Shown here: piece by piece, positions 15,358 to 54,809 of the stretch
Numbering within the stretch: position 1 is the first letter of the stretch
Layout: each line of letters starts with the position of its first letter
Source: Mobula hypostoma
Taxonomy: Eukaryota
NCBI RefSeq assembly: GCF_963921235.1
Contig: NC_086098.1
Location: 212,784,001-212,848,000 of the forward strand
Direction of reading: 5' to 3'
Length of the DNA: 64,000 nt
The notes under the pieces: model-generated
What the model saw: the letters and a program-made list of their open reading frames with translations, nothing else
The model's database searches: none
What the model was told of the DNA's origin: nothing
Program-made: the position numbers and the translations under genes

Positions 15358-16340
15358 AGAGTGACAGGGGCTACCTCACCTTCCACCCCATGTACCTCTA
15401 TATCCAGCACATCATCCTCCGCAACTTCCATCATCTCCAATGTGGATCCTACCACTAGGCACATCTTTCCCTCCTGCACACTCTCCTCTCTCTGTAGGGG
15501 TCACACTCTAAGTGACTCCCTTATCCACTCGTTCCTTCCCACTGATCTCCCTACCTGCTACTTACCTCTGCAAGCGAGACAGGAGTTACACCTGCGCCTG
15601 CAGCTCCTCCCTCATCACCTTTCAGGGCCCCAAACAGTTCTTCCAGGTGAAATGACACTTCCCCTGCTAAGTCTGTCAGGGTTATCTACTGCATCCAGTG
15701 CTCCTGGAGTGGCCACCTCTACATCAATGAGACCGGATGTAGGTGGTGGGATTGCTTTGTGGACCATCTTCGCTCCATCTGCCACTAAAGGCAGGATAAA
15801 AATTCAAACCACCCGTTTGAATTTGATTTCCCGGTCCTATTCTAACATGTCTGCCCATAGCCTCCTCTACTGCCAAAATGAGGCCACATTCAGGTTAGGG
15901 GAGCATCACTTCATATTTCACATGAGTATCCTTGAATCTGATGGCATGAACACCGAGTTCTCCACCTTCCAGTAATTGCCCCCCTTACCCTTCTCTCTTT
16001 TTCCATTCTCCATTTTGGTTAGCCTTTCACTCTCTCTCAACTGTCCACCTCCACTGTTCTCTCCTGTTAGATTCTTCTTCTTCTTCAGCCCTTTGCCTTT
16101 CCCACCTATCACCTCTCAACTTCTCACTTCATCCCCCCTCCTCAACCCACCCACCTGGTGTCACCTGCCAGCTTGTACTCCCTCCCCTCCTCCCACCTTC
16201 TTATTCTGGCTTCTGACCCCTTTCTGTCCTGTCCTGATGAAGTGTCTTGGCCCAAAATATCAACAGTGTACTCCCTCCATAGATGCTGCCTGCCTTGCTG
16301 AGTTCCTCCAGCATTTTGTGTCTGTCTATGATTTCCAGTT
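15358..16340 (+). mobile_element. Penelope-like element 3' part: GIY-YIG endonuclease remnant, pyrimidine tract and pseudo-LTR
   Basis: Mosaic reading CKR..YTC, GPKQFFQV..HFPC, VIYCIQCS..LYINET, RLGEHHFIF..L..DGMNTEFSTF; followed by CTGATGAAG..GGCCC..AGATGCTGCCTG..CTGAGTTCCTCCAGCATTTTGTGT. Confidence 0.8.
16229..16266 (+). ncRNA. Degenerate minimal hammerhead ribozyme motif in the Penelope pseudo-LTR
   Basis: CTGTC-CTGATGA-AGTGTCTTGGCCC-AAAA-TA-TC-AACAG; GAAA box mutated. Confidence 0.55.
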
Positions 16341-16448
16341 GTGTTTGAGAGATAGGAGATGTAGTTTTTCAAATCAAGATATATGAAGTTATTAATAGCG
16401 AAGTGCTTAATAGTTGTAGTGATAGTAACTATTAACCCTTTGCTTTAT

Positions 16449-16532
16449 GGTCTTGGCCCGAAATGTCGACTGTACTTCTTCCTATAGATGCTGCCTGGCC
16501 TGCTGTGTTCCACCAGCATTCTGTGTGTGCTG
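16449..16532 (+). repeat. Partial second Penelope pseudo-LTR/SINE-like copy
   Basis: GGTCTTGGCCCGAAATGTCGACTG..ATAGATGCTGCCTGGCCTGCTG..CCAGCATTCTGTGTG. Confidence 0.8.
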
Positions 16533-16877
16533 CTTGTAAAACCATAGTGTGCTCTTTGTTCTCTGTAAAACGATTGACCTAGATATTATTTGCTGCCAAG
16601 AAAGGTACATAATACTGGAGCTCTGTGTTTCGTGTGAAGGCTTGCCAATGCAGAATCTTTTTGCATGTGAAGTCCAAGGCATTACATAGCAAGCAATGGA
16701 AAGTAGATTGATTAGACAGAAAAGACCCTGGTTGTGAGATTATTAATTGGTCAAACTGCTGTAAAAGTTGAAAGGTTTCTGCTGAGGGCCCAGCCCTCCA
16801 ATTGCCCTGATAGAGGTCCGAGTCCATACACTGTTAAAACTGATACAGATACTCTGACCATTATCAATTCCTCCCAT

Positions 16878-18475
16878 TAAGTTTAAAGTTCAATGTAAAT
16901 TTATTAACATACATACACAACCCCAAAGATTCATTTTCTTGTGGGCAATCACAGTAAATACAGGAAACACAATAAATTCAATGAAAGACCACACCCAGCA
17001 AGACGGACAAAAACCAATGTGCAAATGCAAAAAGAAAGAAAATAAACAAACAAATAAATAAATAAGTGTAAGGGGGTTTCTTCTTTTATGTTACTGCGTA
17101 GGCTAATCAAAATGGCTCCTTTGTTATGTTATAATTAAAATGGCTTTTCTGAAATAACTGCGATGTAAGGAGTTCTCTCTCTCTCTCTGCTTGTTTGGGT
17201 TATATTATTGATAAGAGAGGGAACAAGCCAATTGGGATCGATGTTATTCCTTCTTGTGTGTCTGTAAGCTATTATGTTGCATGGGTTTTGGGAGAGAAGG
17301 CGCGATGGGGACAGAGAGAGTGGACGCGATGCTGTAAGCTGGCCGACAGGACGGACCCCGAGTGGGAATCCAAGGCCCAGGGTCTTCGGCGAGGAGAGGA
17401 GACAAAGATAGACTCATGTGGAGCGTCTGGTCGACCACCGTGGTTGGTCCCAGGCGGCAGGTCGAGGCAGTCAGAGGGGATCGAGTGATGGAAAGAGGAC
17501 CCCATTACTAGAGCTCCAACTGTTGTGCACGAAGTGGTTGAACTGTGATAAATTTGGCACCTTTTACTTTCCTTTTATATTTTATCTCTATTAATTACAT
17601 AGTTCCAGTAAGATATATAAAGTGTAATCATTTACTCGCATATGGTGTATTGTCTGTTATTTGGCGGGGTGGGGTACATCACACAGCATCCACACAAACT
17701 TGATTACCCACTTTGGCAGGGCCGAAGGCTGCGTCCTGTAGACGAAAGCGAGTTGAGCGAGCCTGAGGTGTACTGGGGGCTACATAAGCAATAAATATCG
17801 AGAACATGAAATGAAGAATTCATCAAAGTGAGTGTGTAGGTTGTGGGAACAGTTCAGTGTTGGGGAGAGTGAAGTTGAGTGAAGTTATCTGCTGTGGTTC
17901 AAGAGTTGGTTGAGGGGTAATAACTGTTGAACCTGATGATGCAGGTTCTGTGCCTCCTGTACATTCTTCCTAATGGTAGCAGCGAGAAGAGAGCACGGCC
18001 TAGATGATGAGGGTCCTTAATGATGGATGCTGCCTTCCTGTGCTCTGTGTAGATGTGGTCGAAAGTGGGGAGGGCTTTAACCTTGATGGACTGGGCTATA
18101 TCCACTACTTTTAGTATGCTCTTTCATGCAAGAGCAGTATTGTTTTCATACCAGCCTGTGATGAATCTCGTCAATATACTCTCTGCCACACATCCATAAA
18201 AGTTTGTTAAAGTTTTAAATGACATGCTGAGTCGTTGCAAATTCAAAGAAAGTAGAGGAGCTACCATGCTTTCTTCATAATGGCACTTACATGCTGGACC
18301 CAGGACAGATCCTCTGAAATGATAACACCACGGGATTTAAAATTCCTGACCCTGTCCACCTCTGGTCCTCACGATGAGCAGTGGCTCATGGATCTCTGGA
18401 TTATTCCTCTTGAAGTCAATAATCATCACCTTGGTCTTGCTGACAATGAGTTAGAGGTTGTCCGAGACATTGAGT
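16878..18475 (-). mobile_element. Rex1-like LINE 3' region interrupted by a solo LTR
   Basis: ORF 17899-18105 KAASIIKDPHHLGRALFSLLPLGR; 3' UTR is the reverse complement of 12900-13140. Confidence 0.85.
17067..17784. mobile_element. Solo LTR (718 bp) with 4-bp target duplication
   Basis: TAAG-TGTA...TACA-TAAG; GC- and CpG-richer than its flanks; splits the LINE tail. Confidence 0.8.
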
Positions 18476-18704
18476 GAGTTGGCTCATTATTATCACCAAT
18501 AGCACCCACCCCCCTTGATAAGGCATCTGACCACTGGCCCATTCCTCATTGATACTTCAGACTTGGCTTTTATCCTAGCTGGCACTCTTCCACAGTATTT
18601 TCATCAGACATAGGCATTAGTCATCATTGCAGTAGGCCTACACCTGAGGAAGTTGTTTCTTCTCTAAGCTATATCGTGCTCCTGTAACAATACATCCTTA
18701 AGGT

Positions 18705-19222
18705 TGTTTTAGCTGGGGGTAGTAAATGTTCCCAATGGCGAGTGCCTCAAATAGCCTCTGACATCCAAGTTCAGCTCCTGGCCTTCACGTGTGGCTTAGC
18801 TACTAAGCCGGCGGAACCATTCCTACAGACAGGAGTAGGACAAAAGGTGGGTTACTGGCACCTGAAAACCAATTGCTTTGGGCAGATGGGGCTTGTCAGC
18901 TGTGGTTGCCAGCTCATCTAGGAGAAGGAAATCGCAAACCTCTGCTGCCTTGTGGCTGTTCCCACTCATGGGGAAGGCTTCCAGAGTAAATCCTGAGGGA
19001 AAAATCCAGAAGTAGGAGTCCCAAAAGCAGTCCTACTTTGAGTTCAATGCTGACTGGCAAATCCTGCGATGGTGCTGTTCCTTTGGGTTCATCAGTTGCA
19101 TGGAGAGGGCAAGCTTGCTACATGGGCAACAGCTTGCCCTCCATATTGTACTGCCTAGGCTTGCGTATCTAGACAGCTAGGACAGAATATCTATGGCCAA
19201 CTCTGACTGACAGAGGCCTCAA
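18705..19222 (+). repeat. Interspersed repeat of about 0.5 kb, copy 1 (resembles an RTE 5'-UTR-derived element; family uncertain)
   Basis: Colinear reverse complement of 26125-26690 (CTCAAATAGCCTCTGACA, CCTTCAC.TGTGGCTTAGCTACT, CAGCTCATCTAGGAGAAGGAAA, TAGACAGCT.GGAC). Confidence 0.75.
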
Positions 19223-19988
19223 TCAACCAACAGCACATTGTAAATTCTTGGCCTGATTCAATGTGTTACTTTAACTTTGTAATATGATTCTGCATATTTC
19301 ATCTCCATATTTTCCTTGACTCTCAATAGGACCATAGAGTAAAAGAATTTGGAGCACCCAAAGGCTCCCACTGGGTGTCACATTTCCTCTCCACATCCAT
19401 CCGTCTTTCTTCATGATGAGGATTGATCTCTTTCCTTCATATACACTGCTTCTTTCTTTCCAAAGTTAATCATTGATATTTATTCCTTTTTGCCGTTATC
19501 TTTTTTTTAGTTTTATTGTACTTATTCTCTCTTGCCTTGCTCAGCTATTTCTACTTCCTTGGCATTTGCTTCTGCAGTTTAGATTTGCTCACTGATGCAT
19601 TGTGTGCATATGATTGCAACCATTGTGCTCTACCTGTGATTATATTTCTGGTATGTAGGATTTTCATGTTTGCATTTTAGTTTTCCACATTAAAAATCAA
19701 TTGAACCTCCAGAATCAATAGCAGAATGCTATTAAGCATTGTTTATATTGAGTTAAAATTCACTGGGAATTACTTAGTAAATACACATTCTTTCACTCTA
19801 TTAGAGACTTAGTAATACGTTGGGACTTCCATAAAAACAATAGTCGATATATTGGTTCAGAACGACTGCAAGTTTCAGGGCATCATTTTTGACATCTGTG
19901 ATGTTCAGCTCTCTTTCTAAGTATTGACACAACACATATGGCAGCAGACGGAGAAAACATTAAAGTACAAACCCTGCCTTCAGAAGCC

Positions 19989-20004
19989 GGGGGGGGGGGG
20001 GGGG
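19989..20004 (+). repeat. G16 homopolymer
   Basis: Directly visible. Confidence 0.95.
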
Positions 20005-20444
20005 CGTGCGGGGACACCTTACACAAATTCACAATAAAACCATACTGATTGTATCATAGGGTTAAGTGAAACAAAGCTAATTCTACTTCCTCACAGCTAA
20101 CATACATTTTCTCTGCCCTAAAGCCAGCATCAGCATGGAGCCATAATTCATTACAATTATGCAAATTTGTAGCAGTAAAATATAGACTATTTTGTTGCTA
20201 AGATTTTTATTTAATCAGTTTCAGGATGTGGAAGCTGCCAGCAAGGCCAGCATTTACCGCCCATCCCTACCTGCCCTTGAGTATGCTTCTTGAATCCCCA
20301 GTCCTTCAGCTGCTCCCACGAAACAGTGTTGGGTAGGGAATTTCAGGACTTAGCACCAGTGGTCAATTTATTTCCAAGTCAGAAGAGTGTGTGACTTGAA
20401 GGGGAACCACCATTTGATGTTATTTGCAACTAGCTATAGCTGTT

Positions 20445-20550
20445 GGGAGTCCTGTGGAAGGGTCTCAGCTTGAAACACCAACTGTTTACTCTTTTCCTCA
20501 GATGCTGCCTGGCCTGCTGAGGTCCTCCTGCATTTTGTGTGTGTTGCTTT
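20445..20550 (+). repeat. Penelope pseudo-LTR/SINE-like copy
   Basis: AGTCCTGTGGAAGGGTCTCAGCTTGAAAC..AGATGCTGCCTGGCCTGCTGAG..GCATTTTGTGTGTG. Confidence 0.8.
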
Positions 20551-21067
20551 GTAGTTCTTGTACTTGGTTTTGGAAGTTTGGGCAGTGCTGTTGGGGGACC
20601 CTAGGCAAGCAAATGGTTCAATTTGTATATCGTACATCCTTCCACTATTGGTGGAGGAAGGAGGAAATACAAGATTTTCTGGTCAACAGTGACTCCCCAG
20701 ATATTAATGACAGAGGAATAGAGATCAGTATGCCATTGACCCTCAAGCAGAAGTAGTGATGCTCTACTTTGTTGTACATTGCCACTGCCTCTCTTTTTTG
20801 GTATGTCACTTGTCACTTATCAGCTTATGGCTGAATGATATTTAGACCTTACATTATGCAAGAATGGGCATCTTTAATTGCTGAGGAATTCTGAGTGGAA
20901 TTGTACATTGTACATTGTGCAATCATCAGTGAAGATCCCCCATTCTGATCATTGGATTACAGGAATGTCACTGAAGAATCAATTGAAGACTATTGAAAAC
21001 AGCAATCTGAGATATTGCTGCAATAATGTTTAATCTCTGACAACTACAACCATTTTTTTTTGTAGAT

Positions 21068-21240
21068 TGTATGCCAACAGGGAGCTGGTGGAAGCATATA
21101 CAAAAGCAACATTTAAACAGTATTTGGACAGATATATGAACAGGCAAGAAATGGAAGGATATAGACTATGTGTAGGCGGACATGCAGCACAAAATGGGAT
21201 CAGTGTTGGCACAGACATTACGAACTGTATTATTCTGCGT
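21068..21240 (+). mobile_element. CR1 3' tail fragment
   Basis: ELVEA..TFKQYLDRYMNR motif. Confidence 0.7.
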
Positions 21241-23794
21241 TTTCCTTGATGTCCAGTAAATTCACTTTTACCAGGACACCTTGATACCACAATTAGTCAA
21301 ATGCTGCTTTTATGACAAAGACAGTCATTCTCATCTCACCCTTGGGATTTAGCTCTATGGTTCCTGTTACATAAATTGGGTACCAGTAAGTATGTTATGG
21401 CTTCATAGTATCATTATTGACCCCTTCCATCAGTCTGAAGATTGAGTTTTGATCATTCACCAGAAAAAAATCCATCCCACGTTTTCCAGATAGTCAAGCA
21501 AATGTGGTACTTGTACTTGCTTAGAAGAGCAGATAGTTCTGGAGCATAAGTCTTTAGTTCTACAGCTGGGATTTTCTCTGGTCCTATAACTTTGCTCTCA
21601 GCCATTTCTTGACAACACAGAGTAAATCAAAATGGATGAATTCTGGCTTCTGTAATGATGGGGATCTCAAGAGGTAGTCAAGATGGATCATATGCTTGAC
21701 ATTTCTGCCTGAAAATGCAGAAAGCACGCAGACGAGTAAAAAGCATGTATGTTACAGGTAAAATAGGTTGATAAACTAAAATCAAGGCATAAACATATAT
21801 TTCTTCAAGGCACTATAATAGGATCAAATTCTATTTTTGGCAACAATCCATTGCTTTCTATGGTTTGTAAAAAAAATTAAAAGGATTTATCAGCATTGTA
21901 ACATTGTCAAAGTTACACCAACGTTATTTTTCTGTTTGGTTTCTTCACATAACATGCTGAAAGAATGAACATAATTTTGGTTTCATGGAAATTATCCCAC
22001 AACAACAAATAGAGCAAAATGCTTGACAAGTAGCATGTCTCAGAAAGAATGCTTGCTATTCTTCAGCAAGATGGAAGTGAAAACAAAAATGATGGCTATC
22101 TGACGGCCAACTTTTTCGAACTGATATGCTATCGAGACAACACTGACTGTTAAAGGTCCTTGGCCTAGAAACTCTGTTAAGTTACATAATGACATAGTGT
22201 GTTACATTAGTGTAATTCATCAGAATTCCATTGTACTGTGCAAGCGAGTAGAACACCTTTAGATTCTAGACCCAGGTTCTCGGTGCATCAATTACAGATG
22301 TGCATGGAAGCCAACAGGCATGCACAGTAATGTTAAACAGTGTGAAAGGCTCATTTTTGTACTTCTTATGTAAAACTGTAACGTGAAGGCTAGTTCAGTA
22401 CACACTGCAAAAGGCCTTAACTGTTCGGGATATTTAATGGGAGGCCTGTCTTCACATGAACCACTTTTCTGGAGTACAACATGTTGACATTCTTCCAGGC
22501 ATGTTATTCTTTAGGCTTTCTTATGAATACTTCAATCCCTTGCTGGCCTAGATCGCTTACTGACTGACACTTCCTATTTTCGTCCTCTTGATCTCTCCTC
22601 AAATGGTCTCCAGATCATCTTTATAATTACTGCCTCACCTGACCGACACTCTCTGCTCTCTCTCCCTATGATCATCTGTCCCTTTCCCTGTGAGATACTT
22701 TCTCTATCTCCAGTGGTTCACCCACTGATCTCCACCATCCCATCCTTGTTCCTACCCAACCAACCTCCTCTACAAACTACTCTCTGTAATGGTGGGAGCT
22801 TGTGGATGAAAGGCTTTGTATGAGATCTGGTGAACAAGGCCTGATCTACCTTGAACAATGTTGTAGACATTGTGCACAACAGAATGTCCTCTGGGGTGGG
22901 AGGTGGGACTTCTCACAACAGAGCTATACCCCTATGGCCTCATTATTGTGCCATGCAATCTCTTCACCCATTTCTCTTGTATTTTAGGTCTCTTTCAATA
23001 GTTCCCAGGAAAATGCATTATCTACATGCTAGTATTTATTTTGTGTTAGATACAAGTCCAGGAACAAGAGTGACTAAGCAACTTACAGAGAGTTGCTTCT
23101 GATCATCTGCTTAGATCATCTACATTATATTGAAAAATTATTAGATGTGTCAGCATCCTTCATAAATATGCCCTTCTTAACTTTCAAAGCAATTTACTTT
23201 CCATTCTATATTTTGTAACCATCTGAGCGTGTTTATGGGCCAAATGAAACATCTGTAGTCATGATAAATATCCAGTCACTTACTCCAACCAGTACACCAA
23301 ACTTTAGTTGACTGGTATCTTTACTACCCTGTGGTACTTTACATGATGTAGCAGTATTGAGAATGCCCACAGAATGTCACAAAATCTGACAGATGTCACT
23401 AAAAGGCAGGCAATGAAGCAGACAGTGAACAGCAATTTATCTCAAGTAGTCAGAATTTCAGCAGTTACAGATCCAAAATTAAATTCTAACTGCACACAGA
23501 TTCCACCTCCCCATCTGCTGTGCCCATTTGAATTCCTGTAGCTTTGAACTAAAGTCAAACATTTCTCTTTATAAATATAATACAGTACCAAAAAAGCAGA
23601 CAAATTAAACTGCTGGAAAATGTCAATTATTGCCAAATTCCATACATCCCAGAGATGCTATCAATGGAAATTATATGCTTTTGCTACAAAACAATTTTTG
23701 AACTGAAGTTAACACATTGAACACTGGGCAGCTACTGCAGTTTTCATAATACTTTGTTTTCCAATCTAACATCTGCAAGATCATTCGTGATGAA

Positions 23795-24073
23795 CACACT
23801 CAGCGATCCAGGAACAGCTTCTTCCCCTCTGCCATCCAATTCCTAAATGGACACTGAACCCTTGGACACTACCTCAATTAAAAAAAAATAGTATTTCTGT
23901 TTGTTGCATGATTTTTAATCTATTCAATATACATATACTGTAATTTATTTATTTACTATTATTTTTATTTTATTTTGTGTTTTTTCTTCTAGATTATGTA
24001 TCGCATTGAACTGCTCCTGCTAAGCTAACGAATTTCATGTCACATGCCAGTGATAGTAAATCTGATTCTGATG
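23795..24073 (+). mobile_element. Rex1-like 3' tail
   Basis: RNSFFPSAI-coding sequence and terminal (TCTGAT)n. Confidence 0.75.
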
Positions 24074-24129
24074 AATTCTCATTCCCATTCTTTGTATGCA
24101 TACATCAGAATAGTTGAGTGAAAATCTAA

Positions 24130-24235
24130 CAAAAACTAGAAAATACTGGAAACCTAAGCCTGAAATGTTTGCTCTGTTTTTCTTCCACAGATGCTGCCTG
24201 ACCTACTGAGAATTTTCAGTATTTTCTGTTCTTAT
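24130..24235 (+). repeat. Penelope-derived short repeat, degenerate
   Basis: CCACAGATGCTGCCTGACCTACTGAG..TTTCAGTATTTTCTGTT. Confidence 0.6.
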
Positions 24236-26124
24236 TATTGGCACAATTGCTGGTGGCTGTTGGTGGGAAAAAAGACAGAATCCCAGATACTTGTTGCACT
24301 AGATGAAGTGGATAGTTTTGTTATTTCTTCGGCCAAGAGCTTAACAGCTAGATTTGACAAGTTCAGACTTGTGGAATAAAGTATTATGCTTCAATATATT
24401 ATAAATTATACTAAATAGGATGGTTAATTTAAGTCTGCAACTAGACTATGAAATTCAAGTATATTACTAAAGACTAGTGAGAAGCATTATAAATTGCAGA
24501 TAAAAATCTAATAAAGTAAAATCTCAACTTCATAATCTGTCAGAGGTAAGAAAAGGAAATTCCCAATTACCGATATGTCATGTTACATGCTTTAAATAGA
24601 TTCCATCTTTAGTTGGTTATTCTGTTAATGACATTTTAGTATTTTTTTCATACTTCAGACTGCATGACAATTTTTGCACCATTCTGCTGTTTTGCACACA
24701 TCGGTATATTGATTGTTAAATGTATAAGTGAACTTGATGTGAATAAGGAATTTCATCACACCCTGATGTATACAACAATAAAATAATCTAACCTAACATG
24801 AAGAGAGTGGTTGCTGACCCTTCCCATATTTCTAGTGCATTGGGTCAAAAATGAAACATTTATTTAGTGATACCAGACCTCAAGTGTGACTGTTTCTTTG
24901 TAGTTCTGATCAAATTAAACTTAAAACACACTTTCTGGTAGTGATTTGTCTCGAAATCCCAAGAAAAAAGGTCATCAAAGGAGTTACATATTTTTCAGCT
25001 TGGGCATCATTCCAAGTTACCACAGCTGCCAATAGAAAGGACAGAAACAGACAACACAAAGTGGCATCTCAGTGACAACGCCCAGTAAATAAGATAATGT
25101 AACAGGATACCAAATATTACTTGCTTCAGTCCTCAAGGGGTTAAAGTGACCAGTTAGATCGTTATCCATTGCTTGATTGAGTTTAATAGTCATTCAGAGT
25201 GATTAAATCTGTCAGAGAAGAATCTAAATGGTTGTGGTAATGATGTGAGGGTGTTTGTCTTTGTCTGTTGTTCCCCCTTCTTCTATACACCCTTCACATC
25301 TTGTCTTAGGAACTACACGCCATCAGACTCACTTGACAACTAGAATCTATCCCTAAAATTAAAACATTCCTGACCTATCTCCGATGACAAGGCAGCCAAG
25401 CTTCTCAGCACTCAGGCGCATGAAGAAGCTGACACATTTGTTTTTAATTTCAAAAGAATATAAAGCAAAGATCTGACCCCGTCAATCAGCTTGGGTGACA
25501 AGTTTAATCATTTGTGCCCTACAAAATCTCAGCTAAATAGGAATGCAAATATGTTTCATAGGACTCTTATAAATGCTAATCAAGGCAAAGTAATCAACTG
25601 ACAATTTCACCGATCTCTTTTCAACAGAAGCCAGTCAAGTCACTGTCTCCTGACCACCTCATATAAAAGTCACAGTCAGAGCTTCATAAATCTTCTGAGA
25701 GCTTTACTGACGTGATGTAAAGTAAAATAAACAAAAACTCAGCCCTATGTCTGGAAAAAAAACAACTTGGTCATTAAGGATGGCCTGTCTCTTCAGATAT
25801 GGTTGAACACTGTACAATTAATATACAAAAGAGTTTAGTAGGACAACTTGTTGAATTAGCAATCTTCAAACATATATTTAATGTATGATTATAATGTCAT
25901 GTCACAGAGCATTTCCTTTGCATGTTTTGTATTTCAGTTCCTTCTTGCACATCTCAATGTGCAGATGTTACTGAGCATGCAAATATCAATTCTGAACTAA
26001 TTTTAGGTTTTAAATGGATCTTTAGCGGTTGCCAGAAGCTATATTAACATCCCAGTTTTATATTAGAATATCACAATATTTTAACTTTTAAATAGCAATA
26101 CCCCTGTTATTTTTGTGACGTATA

Positions 26125-26690
26125 ACGAGGCCCTCCATTGGTCAGGGTCGTCCATGGCTATTGTGTCCCAGCTGTCTACATGATACGCAATCCAGGGCAA
26201 TATGATATGGAAAGCAAACTGTTGTCCGCGTAGCAGGCTCCGGCTATCCATGCAGCAGATAAATTGAAAGGAATGGGAGAGACCAATACTGTTTGGCACC
26301 AACGGTGTTGCAGAAGTTGGCAGTCAGTGTTGAATCAACATAGGACTGCCTTAGGGATTCCAGCTCTGGATTTTTCCCTCGAGGTTTATTCCTGAAGCCT
26401 TCCCCATGAATGGATATAGCCACAAGGGAGCGGAAGTTTGAGATCAGAGTTTTCCTTCTCCTAGATGAGCTGCCAACCACAGCTGATGAGCCCCATCTGC
26501 CTGAGGCGACTGGTTCTAAGGCGCCAGAGTCCCTTCTGCAGAAGAAACTGTTCCACTGGGCATAGTAGCTAAGCCACATGTGAAGGCTAGGTGCTGGACT
26601 TGGTTGTCAGAGGCTATTTGAGATGCACAATTTTGGTAGCATTTAAAAGTTAGTGGGATCTTATCACTACTACCTCTCCCAGCGATTTCC
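26125..26690 (-). repeat. Interspersed repeat of about 0.5 kb, copy 2 (inverted relative to 18705-19222)
   Basis: Colinear reverse-complement matches to copy 1. Confidence 0.75.
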
Positions 26691-28530: not shown

Positions 28531-28633
28531 ACCTTTATTCTGTTTTGGAACCAATGTACTTTAGCAAAACTCTATGGGGTAGAACTTCTTCATGTTTTCA
28601 TTACAATTATAGAAGTACACATTGTGCACACAA

Positions 28634-36849: not shown

Positions 36850-37135
36850 CCAAATAACCCAAAGTGCTTAACAGTCAATTTAGTACTTTTAAAAATATAA
36901 TCGCTGTTGTAGAGAATATTATAAACTTTTTGCACATGTCATAGTAAGAAATTAAGCAGGTAAATAACAAAGATACACTCTCACAATGAAAACAAACGGG
37001 ATCCTTTCATATTCCTCAGTCTTGAACAAAAGACAACACAGTTAACATGTTAGCACTCCAGCACTGCCCTAGAATCTCAGTAATGGAGTGAGAGCTGAAG
37101 TGACTAACTTTGCGGAGGGAGGCACTGCTGAGAGC
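36850..37135 (-). mobile_element. Highly degraded Deu-SINE-like remnant
   Basis: CCCAAAGTGCTT..GGGATCCTTTCATAT..GCACTCCAGCACTGC resembles the reverse of Deu-domain SINEs, from memory only. Confidence 0.35.
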
Positions 37136-38029
37136 ATAGAAAGAATAGCAGATTTGAAAATCTAAATGCATGTTTCAGATGGAGAATGTTGACTATAAGC
37201 TTGTTCTTGGGTGCAAGAAGGTGAGGAGATAACTAAAATGGACTCTCAGATTTCACCAGTTTCTACTTGTGTTTAATCTTAACATGATCAGATGAATAAA
37301 TGGAAGCTTGAAGTGACTCTGAACATGCAGAACATGGTCTCAAGACAATACCAAGCTCGAACTGCAAGATTAGTAGTTGGAACAGGTCAGTACACAGGAA
37401 GACGCTTAAGAAGGCTACTGGATTTTACAGTCTCTGTGGGCCACAATAATCAGATGCGTTGTTCCATGTCACACAATAAGACTGCTGATCATCACTTTGA
37501 CCATGAATTCATCCTAACCATTTACTTGATGGCAATTTGTTCCCAGCTGCTGAATCAGCTGTCTATCTGGCCTGTCTATGCTTATCTCCAGATCGGTTAA
37601 AATGGGGGCTTAAGCATTCTTTCACTTCATTTATAATTTTATTTAATTTTCCTGGCAAACATTATGAGCGTTACCATTGATTTTACTACCTAAAAAGAAC
37701 TAACATTCCGCAAAAACAAACACATAATTTTAGTTGGTTGGGGGAGTTATCACTAGTTGACTTACATACGTTAAGTGATATTTTTCTTGGATTGTTACAC
37801 CTTTTGTTTGCAGATTTATGAATAAGATTTTGCATTCTACAGTATTATCTGACAATTTTATGGTTATTCTTCTCTGGATAATATATCTCAGCAATTTATT
37901 AGATTGGCAATCCTCAATAAAATATTCGGCAGCACACACCATTTCACAGGAGTGTGTGTTTCATAAGAAAGTAGACTTATCCCCAAGTAGCATTTTAATT
38001 TATGTATTATAAAGCAGAATCTGATTGAA

Positions 38030-38620
38030 AGACTCAGCCAGTCAGCATCTGTGGAGTGAGAAACGGGGTTAATTTTTCAAGTGGAGACAAAAGAAACTGC
38101 AGACGCTGGAATGTGGAGCAAAAAAACAATCTGCAGGAGAAACCCAGCAGGTTGAGCAGCATTTGTGAGGGAAAAGGATGGCTGATGTTTCAGAACGAAA
38201 CCCTGCATCAGGACTGAAATATCAACTAGCTGAGTTCCTGAGTTCGTAAATATTTCAGTTTTATGATGTCGCCAGAATAGGGTAAAGTTAGAAATCAAAG
38301 ATGTTTTAACTTGCAGAGAAGGGGAAGAAGAGGAGGGAATAACAGAAATGTCTGTATGAAGGTGGCGACCAAGAGATACAGAAATACAATAACCTCATTG
38401 ATGCCAGATGAGAGAGGATGGGGAGTACTGGTTAATTTCAGCCAATCCATCAAGACGAGATAGAAATAGAAGATGAATGAAGATGGGGGAGTGCAGAACA
38501 AAATAAACATGAGAACTGTGAAATACAGAAAACTGCTATGATTGGAAATTAAAGGAGAATGTTGGAAATTCTCAGCAGGTCAGTCAGTAACCATGTAGAA
38601 AGCAATAGAGTTAATCGTTC
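38030..38620 (-). repeat. Cluster of Penelope-derived repeats, including a degenerate hammerhead motif at 38180-38216
   Basis: Reverse strand CAGTC-CTGATGC-AGGGTTTCGTTCT-GAAA-CA-TC; AAACTGCAGACGCTGGAAT; purine-rich tract. Confidence 0.7.
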
Positions 38621-39404
38621 GGGTTAACAATCATTAGATCATTAGAGCATACTGGTCTGATGACTTGAAATGTTAAACCTTATTAGTAGAAATACTTAAC
38701 TGGTTCAAGTTAGCAGTTACCTGCCTGCATAAATGTTTTGATAGAAATGAGATATCATATTAAGGGGATGTGACAAAATCTTCCAAACTTTAGTGTGTGT
38801 TTATTGGCAGATTTGACTGGGCCACAGGTAAGCAGGGAATAGAGTGTAATGGAAAACCTGGCGGGGACTAAACATTCAATGATGCCTATGAGCCAATCAG
38901 CTCAACTTATTAGTTGGGGTATCTGCGGTTCTAGTGTAGCCGACATCTTAGCCAACAGTGAGATTTGACTTTTTTCCAAAGACCAACAGAGCAGAGTGAC
39001 ATAGTGGCTAAAGTGTTTTCAGTCTAAGAGGAATTAAAACAGAAATTAATGCACTTTGTTTTTTTTTATATATATAGGGGTATTGGTGATTCAGGATAAA
39101 TTAGTTTCTACTGAAATGTACTGATTAAACAACATTTACTCCACTAATGCTTTACAGTTCTGCAATCATCGTCAGAATTAAATAACCTGCTTACTCCTAC
39201 ATTATCCATTTGTCTAAGTATTGTAGGAGCCTACATCATGTTCCTACTCAATCTTCTTTGCCATGTAGATAAATGTTAGGTAATGCATTCTTGAAAAATG
39301 TGTACACAGTGAGTGATTACCCGTTAGAAAGTAGGAAAGTATTAGAGTAATCTCAAGATTGACAGTGGAACCATTATGCGTTAGTCCAGTATAAGCCTAT
39401 ATGT

Positions 39405-39962
39405 AACTATAACCATAAGACATAGGAACAGAATTGGGCCATTTAGCCCATGGAATCATGGTTAATTTATTTCCTTGTTAACCCCGTTCTTCTGTCTTCT
39501 CTTCATTATCTTTAAAACACTTATAATCAAAAACCTGTCAACCTCCACTTCAAATATATACAACAACTTGGCCTCCACAGTTGTCTGTGGCAATGAAATC
39601 CACAGAATCACCCTTTGGCTAAAGAAGTTCCTCTTCAACCCTGTTCTAAAAGGACATCCTTCTTTTCTGAGGCTGTGCCCTCTGACCCTAAACTCTCCCA
39701 CTATTGGAATTATGCTCTCTGCACCCACTGTATCTAGGCCTTTCAATATGCTGTAGGTTTCAGTAAGTTCCTCTCTCATTTTTTTAATCTCCAGCAAATA
39801 CAGACCCAGGGCTGTCAAATGCTCCTCATAGGTTAACTGTTTCAGTCCTGGGATCATTCTTGCAAACCTCCTCCAGACCCTGTTCAATAACAGCACATTG
39901 CTTCTTAAATATGGGGCACAAAACTGCTCAGAATATTCCAGGAGCAGTCTGACCAACACCAT
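39405..39962 (-). mobile_element. CR1 ORF2 C-terminal fragment
   Basis: ORF 39462-39962 LVRLLLEY..RRFARMIPGL..RGHSL..NFFSQRV. Confidence 0.9.
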
Positions 39963-42910
39963 TTAACATAAAGCAACACCATTTAATAGTATCTTTTATG
40001 GTCATAATGAAAATTGTATTCAGTTATACTTGAGTGGTGAAAGTACAGCACTCCATACAACTGTGATATTAGTGGGTTTGCTGTCCACAAAGTTTTGAAC
40101 TCAAATGAAGATCTTAGGCCTTATCCAATATAGATAGCTATGGATACCCTCACTATAGAGAAGTTATACTATAGCCATCCACTCTACAAAGACTAGATCA
40201 CTTCCCTGTTTAATCTCCATGGTGTTTAGCTGCCAATACTCACTATTTGAAGAGTAGACCCCCTCCCAAGGAAGAGACACTTCCAGCTAGCAAAGCAGTT
40301 TAAAAACAGTTCATTTCTTTTCAGTAATACATGTTTAAACTTAGATAATTTTTTAAATATATGTTCAAAACACACTGAGGATTTCCATCTTACAAAAGTT
40401 TTCTAAATCACAAATGATCTCTAAAGCACAAAGTATTTCCAAAACACAGGTACAATTCCTATAAGCTAAAAAGATATACCACTGATTGTAAACAAATGAG
40501 CCATCTGTCACAGAAAATGGAGGCAGAGGAATAGCTTCTAGTCAATTCTTATCATTCTATCATTCTTGTTATCGTTCCTGACTATTCCTACCAAACCTGA
40601 TTGCTCTCTAATACTTATACTTCTTTGCCACTTGGTGATGTAATCTGCCTGTGATATTTTTCAAAACCTTTCCTGTGAAATTCACACAGATGGTCTAAAG
40701 TCTTCTGAGGACATAGATCCCAGACACCCAAAATGTGGAGGGTGACTCTCTGCGTACACTAATCTCCCACCTATTGATAGCTATTTGATGTGCTAAGTAA
40801 TAGTATCAATCTGGTCTGCAAGCTTCCTTGAATTAAATAACTTAGCCAGACTTTTTCTGGCTTGATGCAGGCTCAGCTAGCATAATCCCATTGTTTTACA
40901 CTGCATCTCTTGAGCAGCCAGCCCCATGCTGTGCGCCAGTAGTTTGTGCCCTAGAAAGTGATGTTTGCTTGCAAAGCTGTCCTTTTAACTTCAGGTCGGT
41001 TATTGCATGCAATTTCCATTAAGAACTGGTTCTTGTTGATGTCAAGGAGCTATGCAAGGAATATTGCTTGAGAGTTTAATTTCCCTCTTGAAGAGTCAGC
41101 TGCTGTGTTAGAAAGCTGAGCTTGGCAAAAAGGCTCCTCGGGCCATGGACAATGAACATCCACCACACCACATGGTGTGGATGCTTGTCAGAGGCTAACT
41201 GAGTATATGAGGGAGAAGGGAATTTAAGTGTCTGCTGGTAAAGTTATATTAAAAAGGAACAGAGTTGATTCATGTTTAGCTCGAGCATCATCATAAACTG
41301 ACTGGGCCAAACGGCCCACTTCTCAGCTTTGTATTCCATGTCCTCGATGAACAATAATTATTTTCAACAATTTATACCTATATAACTCAGGACAGAATTC
41401 TCATTGTATTCAGAAGTGATCAAAGGGGGACTATGGAAGCAAGTATAAACCTCTGAGACATGACCACTTTGAGTGCCAAACAGCAGGAAAGATGGAATTA
41501 AAAAGAAGCTTCTCACTCAAGAGCATAACCTGCATATGAAATACCCGGGAAAGTCACTTCATCCAACGAAGAGAAAACCAAACAAAAAGAAGCCAAGAAA
41601 ATCATTATGGCTGGTGGTGAGTGCTGTTCAGTTAAATTTGACTTTGCCATTCAGTATTTTACTGCTTGTCCTAAATCCCTACTCATCATAGTATCAATGT
41701 GTTTGAAAGCATGTTGTTTTCTATTCACAACCTGCAAACAACAGCCGATTCTTGTCGCCCCAAACTCTAGCATTCTCCTTTGCATGCGACACGCCCACAG
41801 AGAAACTGATCACTAACAAAAGTGTCACAAATCATCAGGTACTCCTAATGAGGTAGCTGATGATTTTTGACACATAATGATGAATATATTAACTTACACA
41901 GCACTATCTCGCATGACAACCAATGTTTTATTTGTGAAATCTTTTCACAGACCTTTCAATTCCCCTCTTTTAAACTACTTATTCTGCAAGCAGTGCATGA
42001 TAATAGCATAGGTAACAGACTTAGATCCATAGCAGTCATGCTGGCTAGTTTGAAGCACTCAGTGAATAATAAGGTGGTTTACACTTGGAATTTAAAACCT
42101 GAAGAATGCTGGTTACAAATACACTTCTGAATTGCACATTTTTATGAGTAGTGTCCAAAACTGAACACCAAATAGAAAATGAAAAGGTGAATGGAGCATT
42201 CTGAATATTATCCATATTTACTACATGATACAAAAAAGGATGTTTTTTTTATGTCTATCTGCTATACATAGTTCAGTTCAAATTTTGTGCAAGGTTTTAT
42301 TAAAGGTGCTGTTGAACCAACACATTAGAATTGCATACAGGGGCCACTCTGAGCAACTTTATCAGCCAATTCCTATTTCCACGTCTGTAATACAAAAGCA
42401 AACCTGAAATAAAAACAGAAATGCTGGAAATACTTGGTCAACCTCTCCAGAGAAAGTAAAGTGTTGCTGCTGTGGTTAATGGCCACTCATCAAAATCTGG
42501 ATTAGTTCAAGGTAGAGCATGATAAATCCAGAGAGGATGGAAAATAAAGGTCAATGATAGGGACAGAGGGACTGAAGGGGGGGAAAGTACCAGATAACAA
42601 CATTTTAGATTACATGCAAATAGTTAATTTTGATGATCTGAAATTGTTAATTTCAATGCTGAGCCAGATGGCTAAAAAAAGATGAAGGATGAAGTGCTAT
42701 CCCCTGAAATGTTGAGTTCCTTGAATTGTTGTTCTATCCCTCACAGAATCACAAGATTGATTTTACCTTAAAATGAGTCACTCAAAATTCTGCTTCCTGT
42801 GTCCTCACCTCTTCATCCACTTCACATACTTACTGACAAATATCAACTCCCAGTTAAGCAGCACTTTGACTTTGAAATATTTCAACCATTGTTTACAATT
42901 CCCTGTATGG

Positions 42911-42984
42911 CAAGAGTTCCCAACCTTTTTTATGCCATGGACCATTAAACAAGGGGTCCATGGACCACAGGTTGGGAACCCCTG
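42911..42984. mobile_element. 74-bp hAT(Charlie)-type MITE
   Basis: CAAGAGTTCCCAACCT...AGGTTGGGAACCCCTG terminal inverted repeats; 8-bp flanks match only 5 of 8. Confidence 0.7.
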
Positions 42985-43479
42985 CTCTGTGATGTCACAT
43001 TACCTCTGGAGCTTCCAGCAGCCTTATACCCTTGCAAGCTGCCTGTTCATTTTACCTTTTAGCTTCATGATCATTCTTGAATTATTCATTCCATGAATTC
43101 TCATTCTAAAAATATTAACTTCTTTCATCAAATAACAGACCCCTGGAAACCTATCCATTCAAGCATCCCTTTCATCATGAAACCTAAGCTTAATTATTAA
43201 TCCAATATTAATTATTTTTAATAATGCACCCATGAAGCACTCTAGGACATTTTGCTATCCTAAGAATGTCATGGAAATGCAAACTGTTGTTGCTTAATAG
43301 CTGAGACAAGCTATCTATTAGGAAATAATAGGTACAAACCAAGACTTCATTAGCTCCTATAATTTGTTGTTAGCGTGACAGGTTCTGTTTAACCACACTC
43401 TTATTTGTAAAATAGCTGTGCAATTTTGGGTATTTTTCTCATTTATACCAAAAAAAACCCAAAATGAATTATAACTTAT

Positions 43480-43700
43480 AGAAGTTTTTCACACAATGGG
43501 TGGTGATTATCTGGAAGGGACTGCCTAAGGAAATGGTTCAGGCAGATATAATGATAATGTTTAAAAGACATTTGGATAAGTATTTAGTTAGGAAAGGAAT
43601 ACAAACCCAAAGCAGGCAAATGGGATTAGCATAGTTATGACTGGCATGGTTGATTTGGGACTAAAGTGCCATTTCTGCTATGCATACAGCTCTATGACTT
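43480..43700 (+). mobile_element. CR1 3' tail fragment
   Basis: TTTTTCACACAATGGGTGGTG..TTTAAAAGACATTTGGATAAG..CTCTATGACT. Confidence 0.75.
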
Positions 43701-44084
43701 CTTAGATGGTAATGAATGTTATTGACTTCTATGACTTTTGTAGATATTAACAATTAATCACTTGGATGCTACTGCAAATAACAAAGTGAAAAATCATAGA
43801 CTCATCAAGAAATAATTTTCTTTTAACAGTTTTGTTACGAGTAAAAGCATTAAGAGGAAAAAAATAAATGTTAGGTGCATCGCCAAGAATCAATTAATCA
43901 GAAAAGCTAGAAACGAGAGTAGGGGGAAAAAAAATCACTTGTGCCTACTTTTATGTATATATCCAGCCATGGAAGTTGGATCAGGAACTTTCTGTCAGGA
44001 CCCACCCTAACACGGGTGTCATTCTCTATTCCCTCCTTGTATTTCAATGTGTGTCATGACATTAGCAATGTGATTTAATATCAA

Positions 44085-44392
44085 GTCTAGGACCAAGACG
44101 ACACAGCCTCAGGATAGAGGGGCATTGATTTAGAACAGAAATGAGGAGGAATTTCTTTAGCCAGAGGGTGGTGAACCTGTGGAATTCATTCCCATGGACA
44201 GCTGTGGAGGCCTGGTTATTGAGTATACCTAAAGCAGAAACTGCTAGATTATTGATTAGTCAGGGCATCAGAGGTTAAGGGGAGAAGGCAGGAGAGTGGG
44301 GTTGAGAGAGATAATAAATCAGCCATGATAGAATGGCGGGACAGACTCAATGGGCTGATTGGCCTAATTCTGCTCCTATGTCTTACGGTCTA
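44085..44392 (+). mobile_element. CR1 3' end
   Basis: FRTEMRRNFFSQRVVNLWNS and tail CTAATTCTGCTCCTATGTCTTACGGTCT. Confidence 0.85.
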
Positions 44393-44414
44393 AAACATCA
44401 TGGTATATGACATC

Positions 44415-44810
44415 TCCTGCAGAGAGTGGTATGGACAGCCCAGCACATCTGTAAATGTGAACTTCCCACTATTCAGGACGTTTACAAAGACAGGTATATA
44501 AAAAGGGCCCAAAGGCTCAATGGGGACCCGAGCCACCCCAACCACAAACTGTTCCAGCTGCTACCATCTGGGGAACGGTACCACTGCATAAAAACCAGGA
44601 CCAACAGGCTCCCGGACAGCTTCTTCCACCAGGCCATCAGACTGATTAATTCATGCTGACACTACAGTATTTCTATGCTATATTGTTGTACATACTATTT
44701 ATTATAAATTACTATGAATTGCACATTGTACATTTAGATGGAGATGTAATGTAAAGATTTTTACTCCTCATGTATATGAAGGATGTAAGTAATAAAGTCA
44801 ATTCAATAAA
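44415..44810 (+). mobile_element. Rex1-like 3' end
   Basis: ORF 44426-44659 DPSHPNHKLFQLLPSG..RTNRLPDSFFHQAIRL; AATAAAGTCAATTCAAT tail. Confidence 0.85.
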
Positions 44811-45337
44811 CCAAACAGTACATCATGCAAAACACAGGTAACTTAACATCAATCAAAGGGTCCCCAAGTTTATTTTTACTAATCCTCACACTTTAAATTA
44901 CAAGTGCTATCCTTTTGCAGTCAAAGACAAGGGTCTACTGCGGTGTCAACTTAACTTGGCAAAAATGGGTGAACTCTAATTATGTATCATGGATGGATAA
45001 CCCTGGTAGGAGCCCATGGATGGGATAGTATAGTTCTATGTAATTTGCTGAAAATTCCAGGAACACTTGCAGAGTTGACAACCTGAATTTGAAAGAGGCT
45101 GATGAAACCTGATTCTAGTTTACTATTATTGTACATCTATAATTCAATCTCGCTTATGTGGTGATTACAAATCAAAGGTTGCCTGAAGTTATGAACATTT
45201 CCTGAATTACTGAACAAGCAGGTACTTGAACCTGCCCAGTTTAATGGTACAAAATAATGAAAAAGAATGAAAGATAGGACATTAGTTTTAACTTTGCAAT
45301 AACAGAGTACAATAAAATATTAGTTTTTTAAATACTA

Positions 45338-45507
45338 AACACAAGAGATTCTGCAGATGCTGGAAATCTTGAGCAACACACACAAAATACTGGAGGAACT
45401 CAGCAGGTCAGAAGGCATCTATGGAGAGGAATAAACAGGTCAACATTTCAGGCTGAGACCCTTCATCAGGACTAGAAAGATAGGGGGAAGAAGCTAAATT
45501 AAGAAGC
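45338..45507 (-). repeat. Penelope pseudo-LTR/SINE-like copy with hammerhead core at 45439-45473
   Basis: Reverse strand AGTC-CTGATGA-AGGGTCTCAGCCT-GAAA-TG-TT-GAC. Confidence 0.8.
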
Positions 45508-46399
45508 ATTTTTAAATTCTGCAGTTTCTATTAAATTTGCTATCGTTGCCATAATAATGGCAACAAACCCAAGGTTCTATATCCTAGAAAAAAGCAATCT
45601 TCCTGTCACTTGAAAAGAAAACATTCGGCTGTTTGGTTTGCTTTCTTGGAGTACTAAAATAATATCTGGTTTATTATAATTTTCAATAGTATATTAACTT
45701 AATTTAAAACAAAAGCTGTTCAAAAAAAAGGCCCAAGTACTTATCTAAGACATGGGGAAACATACGTGATAAATGTGTTCATGTGATTCATTGTGGAATA
45801 TGGTTTACTGATTTGCTGTTTGAGAAAGGAAAATAGCAGACTATGATTTAATAATGTTAATCACTTCAAAATATAGTGCATGTGATGGTTTATTTCTCTC
45901 TAATTTTTGCTCTCTATTCCCGTACTATATTTAAACTTTTTTATTAAGAGGGCTGGAATATAATCAGTGTTTCCAAAATCTCTTCTGTGTAGGTTCTGTA
46001 AGGAATGAGGCTATCATATCTCAGTATCTTCCTCTGTTTATCTTTCTTGTCTTCAAGAATGCATGAGTGTTTTTTTTCTAGGCGGCCTGGCAAAGGATGG
46101 GAACTTGCCCATGATAAAAGACATGTCTCAAGTAATGAATACTGAAAAATACATTAGGCCATGATATTCTGTCATCACATGCTACTTACAGGGACAAAAG
46201 CAATGAGTTTTGTACTTTCCCATTTCCTGCAACAGTTAATTGGTTGCTCGAGGTTCATGGATTTGCTATGTAGCTACAGAACCATGTTTAAACATTGAAG
46301 GGAAGCCTTTGCTATTGTGCGGGTTATTCTTTCAGTTTGAGCAGCATGAAAATAACGTAAGGGACACCGAACATATTTTACATTGTCCCGAGCAATGAG

Positions 46400-46790
46400 T
46401 ACAAAATGCTGGAAGAACTCAGCAAGTCAGGCAGCATCTATAGAAATAAATAAACAGTCGATGTTTTGGGCCAAGACCCTTCATCAGGACTGGAAAGGAA
46501 GAGGGAAGACGCCAGAATAAAGAGGTGCGGGGAGCAGAAGGAGGAGAACTAGATGGTGATAGGGAAGGTAAAGGGCAGGAGATGAAGGAATCTGACAGGA
46601 GAGGAAAGTGCACCAAGGGAGAAAGGAAAGAAGGAGAGGCGCTGGGGGAGATGATAGGGAGGTGAGGAGAAAAGATACGAAGCCAGAGTGGGGAATAGAA
46701 GAAGAGGGAAGGGAAAGGGATTTTTTTTTACTGGAAGGAGAAATTGATGTTCGTGCCATTAGGTTGGAGATTACCAAGATGGACATTACC
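46400..46790 (-). mobile_element. Penelope 3' end (ORF tail, pyrimidine tract, pseudo-LTR)
   Basis: Reverse-complement homolog of 15900-16320. Confidence 0.85.
46455..46492 (-). ncRNA. Minimal type-I hammerhead ribozyme motif (best copy; GAAA box mutated to AAAA)
   Basis: CAGTC-CTGATGA-A-GGGT(CTTG)GCCC-AAAA-CA-TC-GACTG: perfect 5-bp stem I and 4-bp stem II. Confidence 0.65.
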
Positions 46791-54700: not shown

Positions 54701-54809
54701 AGAGCCGGGAGACCCTTCAGGCGCCTGCTTCAAAGACAATGAGAGGAAGCAGCTCTCGATGAGTGAACAAATAATTGTAGGAAAGCTTCAAGAGAGTGAA
54801 GATGTAGAC

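What the first reader, a model, noticed from the sequence alone, without database searches (positions are those of the whole stretch)
16229..46492. Dispersed Penelope-derived repeats reconstruct a minimal hammerhead ribozyme
Seen: related copies at 16229(+), 16449(+), 20445(+), 38180(-), 45439(-) and 46455(-). Their consensus is CAGTC-CTGATGA-A-GGGT(CTYG)GCCC-GAAA-CG-TC-GACTG. That gives stem I CAGUC/GACUG, the CUGAUGA box, a 4-bp stem II, the GAAA box, almost no stem III, and a GUC cleavage triplet. Established: this is type-I hammerhead topology, and minimal hammerheads occur in Penelope pseudo-LTRs, where the tiny palindromic stem III implies cleavage as a dimer. No single copy here is intact, and several defects are CpG-type transitions (CCCGAAACG to CCCAAAACA). 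Inference: a high-copy, ribozyme-carrying SINE/retrozyme-like family mobilised by Penelope and silenced by methylation decay.
Basis: partly seen in the sequence, partly recalled or inferred. Interest (0 to 1): 0.75.

Follow-up and report, generated by a model that had tools for sequence, protein, structure and literature searches.

The report
Decayed hammerhead motifs in Penelope tails
The repeats are real: they are dead, mostly front-truncated end pieces of a very abundant Penelope-like jumping gene that carry the tiny hammerhead ribozyme motif already known from this class, so this is an ordinary member of a known kind.

Summary
All six copies exist at the stated places. A profile search finds ten family members in the window. 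Their shared 38-nt motif has helix I, CUGAUGA, one bulged A, a 4-bp helix II, GAAA, an ACGU mini helix III and a GUC site. This is the minimal type-I hammerhead described for Penelope-like elements (PLEs). No hit to a formal descriptor occurred in 200 shuffles of the window.

One correction: copy 45439-45472(-) keeps every core nucleotide and passes the descriptor. "No copy intact" is therefore too strong. CpG decay is confirmed: 21 of 38 differences are CpG transitions (p = 7.5e-7), including the catalytic G12.

The SINE/retrozyme reading is not supported here. Two copies run on upstream into a 3' UTR and the end of an ORF, one of them with a GIY-YIG remnant. The 5' ends vary. There is no tRNA-like head and no tandem array. 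The 3' ends fall into a short and a longer form, like the known PLE "tail".

The family is huge: about 69,000 and 80,000 contigs in DNA runs of two species. This scan has already reported the same element many times elsewhere in this genome. Cleavage is untested.

The parts
15345..15975 (+). Frameshifted 3' part of a Penelope-like ORF. It holds a GIY..YIG remnant at 15681-15734 and a stop at 15973-15975. The 5' truncation point is near 15345-15360.
   Evidence: Three-frame translation. A regex for GIY-x-C-x-C-x-YIG-ET hits only here. The nearest Atlas clusters carry PF01541 GIY-YIG, score 0.93. Repeat depth starts at bin 15344-15387. Pfam and word searches were blank.
15976..16228 (+). CT-rich 3' UTR (pseudo-LTR part) between the ORF stop and the hammerhead.
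   Evidence: It aligns with the region upstream of copy 46455.
16229..16266 (+). Hammerhead motif, 8 differences from the family motif (G12A, helix II mismatch, G1.1A and others). It has one compensatory A-U to U-A change in helix I.
16267..16340 (+). Tail downstream of the cleavage site. It is the most abundant part of the family.
16449..16532 (+). Independent 5'-truncated copy that starts inside helix II (GGTCTTGGCCCGAAATGTCGACTG plus tail). It lacks CUGAUGA and has the short 3' end.
   Evidence: The spacer 16356-16443 has almost no repeat depth.
20450..20586 (+). Short copy that starts at the 5' edge of the motif (motif 20447-20484; A6T and U7G kill the core). Candidate 11-bp target-site duplication at 20439-20449 and 20587-20597.
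24154..24228 (+). Old decayed copy: the 3' half of the motif plus tail.
38126..38340 (-). Copy with upstream UTR-like CT-rich sequence. The motif is at 38179-38216 (10 differences, A9C). It has the long tail.
38028..38088 (-). Second partial copy joined head-to-tail to the end of the tail of the 38180 copy. It starts in helix II.
   Evidence: (E=3.3e-5).
38558..38650 (-). Old decayed copy with a duplicated and eroded core and the long tail.
45337..45508 (-). 172-bp copy made of about 35 nt of UTR, the motif and the long tail. Candidate 12-bp AT-rich target-site duplication at 45520-45509 and 45336-45325. The motif 45439-45472 passes the formal min-HHR descriptor.
46400..46775 (-). 5'-truncated copy made of the last ~15 codons of the ORF, the stop, about 240 nt of UTR, the motif at 46455-46492 and the short tail. 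The motif has 3 differences, all CpG-type, including G12A.
54813..54945 (+). Old copy that starts near the motif's edge. The motif 54813-54848 is heavily eroded. It has the long tail.

Best explanation
The repeats are genomic fossils of one very abundant Penelope-like retrotransposon (PLE) of an elasmobranch. In this element the ORF ends in a GIY-YIG endonuclease domain. About 250 nt of CT-rich UTR follows, then a 38-nt minimal type-I hammerhead, then a tail of about 70 nt or about 105 nt. The hammerhead consists of a 5-bp helix I, CUGAUGA, a bulged A, a 4-bp helix II with a tetraloop, GAAA, an ACGU mini helix III and the GUC cleavage site.

Shown here: the anatomy, the same-strand linkage to the ORF end, the variable 5' ends, the two classes of 3' end, the very high copy number in two species, and the excess of CpG transitions.

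Inferred from published work on other PLEs: the RNA is copied by target-primed reverse transcription that starts at internal sites in the tail, and synthesis often stops early, which yields the short 'motif plus tail' pieces. The hammerhead lacks a stable helix III, so it can only become active when two copies pair through ACGU, or when the element's protein assists. It would then trim tandem or read-through transcripts. Four CpGs lie in the 38 nt, one of them including the catalytic G12, so methylation-driven deamination quickly destroys the motif in inserted copies.
For: - Family membership: 10 copies at E from 1e-31 to 2e-4.
- Motif anatomy: shown, with 0 descriptor hits in 200 shuffles.
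- Helix register: 78% of cells pair, against 3-50% when the partners are slid.
- ORF remnant with a GIY..YIG pattern on the same strand 254 nt upstream of the 16229 motif. The Atlas neighbours carry PF01541.
- Copy 46455 also holds the ORF end and the UTR.
- 3' ends: short and long forms that differ by about 35 nt, matching the optional 30-40-bp PLE tail (PMC8557442) and the two adjacent internal RT start sites in the anole Poseidon element, which lie 85-92 nt past its hammerhead cut site (PMC11167929).
- Candidate target-site duplications flank two copies, one of them AT-rich.
- Copy number: 69,450 and 80,088 contigs in DNA runs of two species lay on the 1.3-kb stretch. Their commonest letters keep GAAA and AGTCCTGATGA.
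- CpG excess: p=7.5e-7.
- Minimal hammerheads in PLE pseudo-LTRs of fishes and other vertebrates, with dimer logic and weak activity, are published (PMC4209133).
Against: - No reverse transcriptase domain is attached to any copy in this window, so 'PLE' rests on a degenerate endonuclease remnant. Pfam and two word searches did not recognise it.
- No Rfam hammerhead model scores, even at E<=10.
- Covariation among the seven motifs is not above control.
- No cleavage data exist. The runs were available only as contigs, so RNA ends could not be seen.
- No copy starts at the predicted cleavage site.
Confidence: 0.88

Rival explanations
1. The short 'motif plus tail' units are a non-autonomous lineage of their own, SINE- or retrozyme-like. 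They would be transcribed and copied in trans by the PLE enzyme because the tail holds its binding and initiation site.
For: Summed contig depth over the tail is 10 to 1000 times that over the ORF part. At least one copy starts right at the motif's edge and has a candidate target-site duplication. In the anole element the RNA just downstream of the hammerhead is sufficient as a template in vitro (PMC11167929). A 2026 preprint derives vertebrate non-LTR retrozymes from PLE pseudo-LTRs (10.64898/2026.07.22.740005).
Against: The 5' ends in this window are scattered over the ORF, the UTR, the motif edge and helix II. There is no promoter-bearing head, no tRNA and no A/B box. There is no tandem array. 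Heavy 5' truncation alone explains the excess of 3' ends (PMC8557442). Contig depth is not a copy number.
Confidence: 0.1
2. The hammerhead likeness is a coincidence of a repeat consensus, and the RNA never had catalytic potential.
For: No Rfam hit. No significant covariation. The monomer's lowest-energy fold is a rod that pairs GAUG with CGUC rather than the hammerhead fold.
Against: All 11 invariant core positions, the bulged nucleotide, the G10.1-C11.1 pair and the palindromic 15.2/16.2 occur together. No descriptor hit occurs in 200 shuffles. The position downstream of a GIY-YIG ORF is exactly where such motifs are documented (PMC4209133).
Confidence: 0.02

Closest known systems
Minimal hammerhead ribozymes (min-HHR) in the pseudo-LTRs of metazoan Penelope-like elements (Cervera and de la Pena 2014, PMC4209133)
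   Same: Type-I topology. The CUGANGA and GAAA boxes. [quoted passage not shown] The G10.1-C11.1 pair. A short helix I. No helix III beyond a palindromic 15.2/16.2 dinucleotide. Many dispersed single motifs in truncated elements, and location 3' of the ORF.
   Different: Helix II here is the canonical 4 bp, not the 6-8 bp common in the published PLE families. The host is a cartilaginous fish. Most copies seen here are mutated. No activity data exist.
Poseidon_Ac of the green anole (Frangieh et al. 2024, PMC11167929)
   Same: A hammerhead is followed by a stretch of about 90 nt that ends at the 3' boundary of genomic insertions. There are two alternative 3' ends (the tail). The target is AT-rich in one case here.
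   Different: In the anole the ORF starts inside the hammerhead. Here that is unknown: a frame opening at the ATG in the tail stays open to the element's end, but no full-length copy was available. Protein-assisted cleavage was shown there and not here.
Animal non-LTR retrozymes (PMC7229834; preprint 10.64898/2026.07.22.740005)
   Same: Type-I hammerheads that need two copies to fold, and a relationship to PLE pseudo-LTRs.
   Different: Retrozymes are tandem arrays that give circular RNAs. The copies here are dispersed single units with a variable 5' extent, and several are attached to PLE coding sequence.

Membership tests
PLE-type minimal hammerhead (min-HHR descriptor, PMC4209133) | Core nucleotides C3 U4 G5 A6 N7 G8 A9 ... 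G12 A13 A14 A15.1 ... U16.1 H17 | tested here: met
   Complete in 45439-45472(-). It is the majority in the window alignment and in genome-wide contigs. The other copies are mutated.
PLE-type minimal hammerhead (min-HHR descriptor, PMC4209133) | Helix II with the G10.1-C11.1 pair and an unpaired nucleotide 5' of it; helix I of 4-6 bp | tested here: met
   Helix II cells are 93% paired and helix I cells 64%. A bulged A is present in five of the six copies that hold that column. Helix I is 5 bp in copy 46455 and 3 bp in copy 45439.
PLE-type minimal hammerhead (min-HHR descriptor, PMC4209133) | No helix III, with palindromic positions 15.2/16.2 (dimer pairing) | tested here: met
   ACGU appears in consensus letters of contigs from runs X20 and X5. 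Every window copy has TG, CA or TA there, which are CpG decay products.
PLE-type minimal hammerhead (min-HHR descriptor, PMC4209133) | Self-cleavage after H17 | not testable with these tools
   Only contigs were available, so no RNA ends could be seen.
Rfam Hammerhead_1 (RF00163) and the other Rfam hammerhead models | Covariance-model score at or above gathering | tested here: not met
   No hammerhead match at gathering or at E<=10, on the whole window or on a 1.3-kb stretch. In my understanding these models expect a helix III.
Penelope-like element | C-terminal GIY-YIG endonuclease in the ORF | tested here: inconclusive
   The pattern VIY-x3-C-x2-S-x3-YIN-ET is at 15681-15734. The Atlas neighbours carry PF01541. 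Pfam and word searches were blank.
Penelope-like element | Telomerase-like reverse transcriptase | not tested
   All copies in the window are truncated 3' of the RT. The other RT fragments in the window are unlinked and were not classified.
Penelope-like element | Heavy 5' truncation, an optional 30-40-bp tail, and partial tandems | tested here: met
   Variable 5' ends. Short and long 3' ends. One head-to-tail junction at about 38100. Same-orientation clustering, P=0.002.
Non-LTR retrozyme | Tandem repeats of hammerhead-bearing units | tested here: not met
   Tandem Repeats Finder reports no array of this family.
SINE | Pol III promoter head (tRNA, 5S or 7SL) and a defined 5' end | tested here: not met
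   No tRNA-like sequence in the window. No A or B box in any copy at up to 1 mismatch. The 5' ends differ between copies.

The most novel reading that the evidence does not exclude
The short 'hammerhead plus tail' units are not just truncation debris. They would be a self-sustaining non-autonomous lineage re-copied in trans by the Penelope enzyme, because the tail carries its binding and initiation site. The hammerhead module would be kept because it helps to release or fold that template.
Probability: 0.1. Interest if true: 0.4.

Novelty: new member of a known kind. Interest (0 to 1): 0.15.

Why it matters
It matters little beyond annotation. The finding documents one more vertebrate lineage, a cartilaginous fish, in which a Penelope-like element carries the minimal hammerhead and has spread to tens of thousands of copies. 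It also shows why such motifs erode fast: four CpGs lie in the 38 nt, and one of them includes the catalytic G12. These repeats should be masked as Penelope ends. They should not be reported as new ribozyme genes or as a new SINE.

Tried and rejected
- Rfam gave no hammerhead match at gathering, at E<=10 on the whole window, or on a 1.3-kb stretch. The weak snoRNA and miRNA matches there are noise.
- Pfam on the ORF and on four of its frame pieces was blank.
- Two word-based protein searches, with the 212-aa and the 45-aa pieces, were blank. The copy is too degenerate and frameshifted, and the length filter excludes full-length PLE proteins.
- Covariation counting on seven motifs was not above the controls. 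These are decaying copies of one source, so the test has no power here.
- RNAcofold of two motif copies gives an extended duplex. The dimeric hammerhead is not a nested structure, so this says nothing.
- The reads tool returned contigs only. Transcript ends at the GUC site and true copy numbers could therefore not be read.
- No Repbase or Dfam library was on hand, so I could not check whether the family is already catalogued under a name.
'Devil ray' comes from earlier notes of this scan and was not checked.
Full report
**1. Observation.** Reading the six stated places shows the same sequence block each time...AGTCCTGATGAAGGGTCTYGGCCCGAAACGTCGACTG, followed by a conserved tail (...GATGCTGCCTGRCCTGCTGAGTTCCTCCAGCATTTTGTG...).
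- BLAST and an nhmmer profile built from four copies recover ten members in the 64-kb window, at E from 1e-31 to 2e-4.
- The motif is 38 nt long.

**2. Is it a hammerhead and more than chance?** I wrote a formal minimal type-I descriptor. It requires helix I of at least 3 bp, CUGANGA, 0-1 bulged nucleotide, helix II of 4-6 bp, a loop of 3-8 nt, GAAA, two nucleotides, then U and H.
- It hits 45439-45472(-) in the window.
- With G12 relaxed to R it also hits 46455-46492(-).
- It gives no hit in 200 dinucleotide-preserving shuffles.
- The named helices are in register: 78% of cells pair, against 3-50% when the 3' partners are slid.
- Covariation is not above the controls. That is expected for decaying copies of one source. 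The only double change is A-U to U-A in helix I of the 16229 copy.
- Rfam's hammerhead models do not score, even at E<=10. Formal Rfam membership is therefore not met. The published min-HHR descriptor class (PMC4209133) is the right comparison.

**3. State of the copies.**

| Copy | Differences from the motif | Notes |
|---|---|---|
| 46455 | 3 | All CpG-type, including G12A, which removes the catalytic general base |
| 45439 | 5, plus a 1-nt insertion in helix I | Every core nucleotide is kept; its ACGU has become AUGU, which can still self-pair through two G-U pairs |
| 16229 | 8 | |
| 20445 | 9 | A6T and U7G |
| 38180 | 10 | A9C |
| 16449 | 3 | Begins inside helix II and lacks CUGAUGA |

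- 'No copy intact' is nearly right, but it overlooks copy 45439.
- Of 38 differences, 21 are C>T or G>A at the eight CpG positions. That is 44% of CpG cells against 10% of other cells (p=7.5e-7).
- The reference motif was partly inferred from these same copies. However, genome-wide contig letters independently give CCCGAAAC(A/G)TCGACTG.

**4. What the copies are attached to.**
- Upstream of the 16229 motif, on the same strand, lies a frameshifted ORF that ends at 15975.
- One frame piece of that ORF reads ...VIYCIQCSWSGHLYINETG...DHLRS. This is a GIY...YIG pattern with the interspersed cysteines that, from my knowledge of the family, are typical of Penelope endonucleases. A regex finds it only here in the window.
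- The protein atlas puts the piece next to short chordate proteins that carry PF01541 GIY-YIG (score 0.93).
- Pfam and two word searches were blank, so I rate this feature as suggestive and not proven.
- The ORF ends ...ESDGMNTEFSTFQ*. The 46455 copy holds the equivalent last codons, the stop and about 240 nt of the same CT-rich UTR before its motif.
- Copies 38180 and 45439 carry shorter UTR stretches. Copy 20445 starts at the motif's edge. Copies 16449 and 38088 start inside helix II.
- There is no tRNA-like sequence, no A or B box and no tandem array.
- This pattern is the heavy 5' truncation described for PLEs (PMC8557442). It is not the pattern of a SINE with a defined head, nor of a tandem retrozyme.

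**5. 3' ends.**
- Copies end either at ...GTGTGTTGCT, about 70 nt past the cleavage site (46455, 16449), or about 35 nt further at ...GATTTCCAGCATCTGCAG..TCTTGTGT (45439, 54817, 38180, 38627).
- Copy 16229 has only part of the extension, and the 3' end of copy 20445 is uncertain.
- PLEs are known for an optional 30-40-bp 'tail' (PMC8557442).
- In the anole Poseidon element, reverse transcription starts at two adjacent internal sites 85-92 nt past the hammerhead cut site, and these sites coincide with the ends of genomic insertions (PMC11167929). The geometry here is the same. That link is an inference.
- Candidate target-site duplications flank two copies: a 12-mer AT-rich repeat around 45337-45508 and an 11-mer around 20450-20586.
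- Four neighbour pairs lie within 1.1 kb in the same orientation (simulated P=0.002). This agrees with the published habit of PLEs to insert beside older copies.

**6. Abundance and age.** I laid the contigs of four runs on 15300-16600 at 80% likeness.

| Run | Type | Contigs laid |
|---|---|---|
| X1 | DNA, organism A | 69,450 |
| X5 | DNA, organism B | 80,088 |
| X20 | guessed to be RNA | 6,684 |
| X18 | guessed to be RNA | 4,001 |

- The summed depth over the tail is far above that over the ORF part. Contig depth is not a copy number.
- The low value over the 16229 motif itself reflects that copy's divergence.
- Organism B has near-identical contigs across 15300-16017, including the junction with unique flank. 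This insertion therefore predates the split of the two species.
- The contigs from the RNA-type runs embed the repeat in longer pieces. That does not show transcription of the element on its own, and contigs cannot show cleavage ends.

**7. Mechanism.** Shown: the anatomy, the linkage, the truncation pattern, the abundance and the CpG decay. The rest is inferred from the literature.
- The motif has no stable helix III. It can therefore fold actively only as a pair through the ACGU palindrome (PMC4209133) or with help from the element's protein (PMC11167929).
- Its proposed role is trimming of tandem or read-through transcripts.
- Uncleaved RNA was the main insertion template in vitro (PMC11167929). 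This fits the fact that no copy here begins at the cleavage site.

**8. Comparison and novelty.** This is the published class of PLE minimal hammerheads, seen in a cartilaginous-fish family with a canonical 4-bp helix II.
- A 2026 preprint already links vertebrate retrozymes to PLE pseudo-LTRs and includes one chondrichthyan species (10.64898/2026.07.22.740005).
- Earlier notes of this scan report the same element many times elsewhere in this genome. I used them as leads only.
- My own tests agree with their reading that the short units are Penelope end pieces.

**Verdict.** The feature is real and the motif was correctly recognised. The SINE/retrozyme claim is not supported, and the interest is low.

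Noticed in passing
window 10849-11094 (+): A ~245-bp near-perfect fold-back that looks like a MITE-type inverted repeat. It gives sub-threshold Rfam matches to the plant miRNA precursor models MIR2606 and MIR4208 (63 and 55 bits, gathering ~140).
   Followed up: no
window 1333-1893(-), 7011-7523(-), 54260-54739(-), 57816-58385(-), 61856-62341(-): Other retroelement remnants: four ORF fragments with Pfam RVT_1 and one with RT_RNaseH_2 (LTR-retrotransposon type). None is joined to a hammerhead copy. They were not classified further.
   Followed up: no
window 38028-38217 (-): A head-to-tail junction. The long tail of the 38180 copy runs straight into a second partial copy that begins in helix II (GTCTCC...). 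The independent 16449 copy begins at the same motif position, which may be a preferred stop of cDNA synthesis just past the helix II hairpin.
   Followed up: partly
window 16283-16340 (+) and the equivalent place in the other copies: An ATG about 22 nt past the cleavage site (in ...ATAGATGCTGCC...) opens a frame (MLPDLLSSSSILC...). In the five copies I read by eye (16229, 46455, 20445, 16449, 54817), and in 45439, it stays open to the end of the element. In the anole Poseidon element the ORF starts at the hammerhead, so this could be the ray element's start codon. No full-length copy was available to check.
   Followed up: no
window 45515-45523 and 45346-45354 (-): The 9-mer CTGCAGAAT occurs in the tail end of the 45439 copy and also in the flank just upstream of its 5' target-site duplication. 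This may be chance, or a trace of an older tail at the target.
   Followed up: no
window 15300-16017: Contigs of a second species (organism B, run X5) match this locus, including the junction with unique flank, with about 1-4% differences. The truncated Penelope insertion is therefore orthologous and older than the split of the two species.
   Followed up: partly
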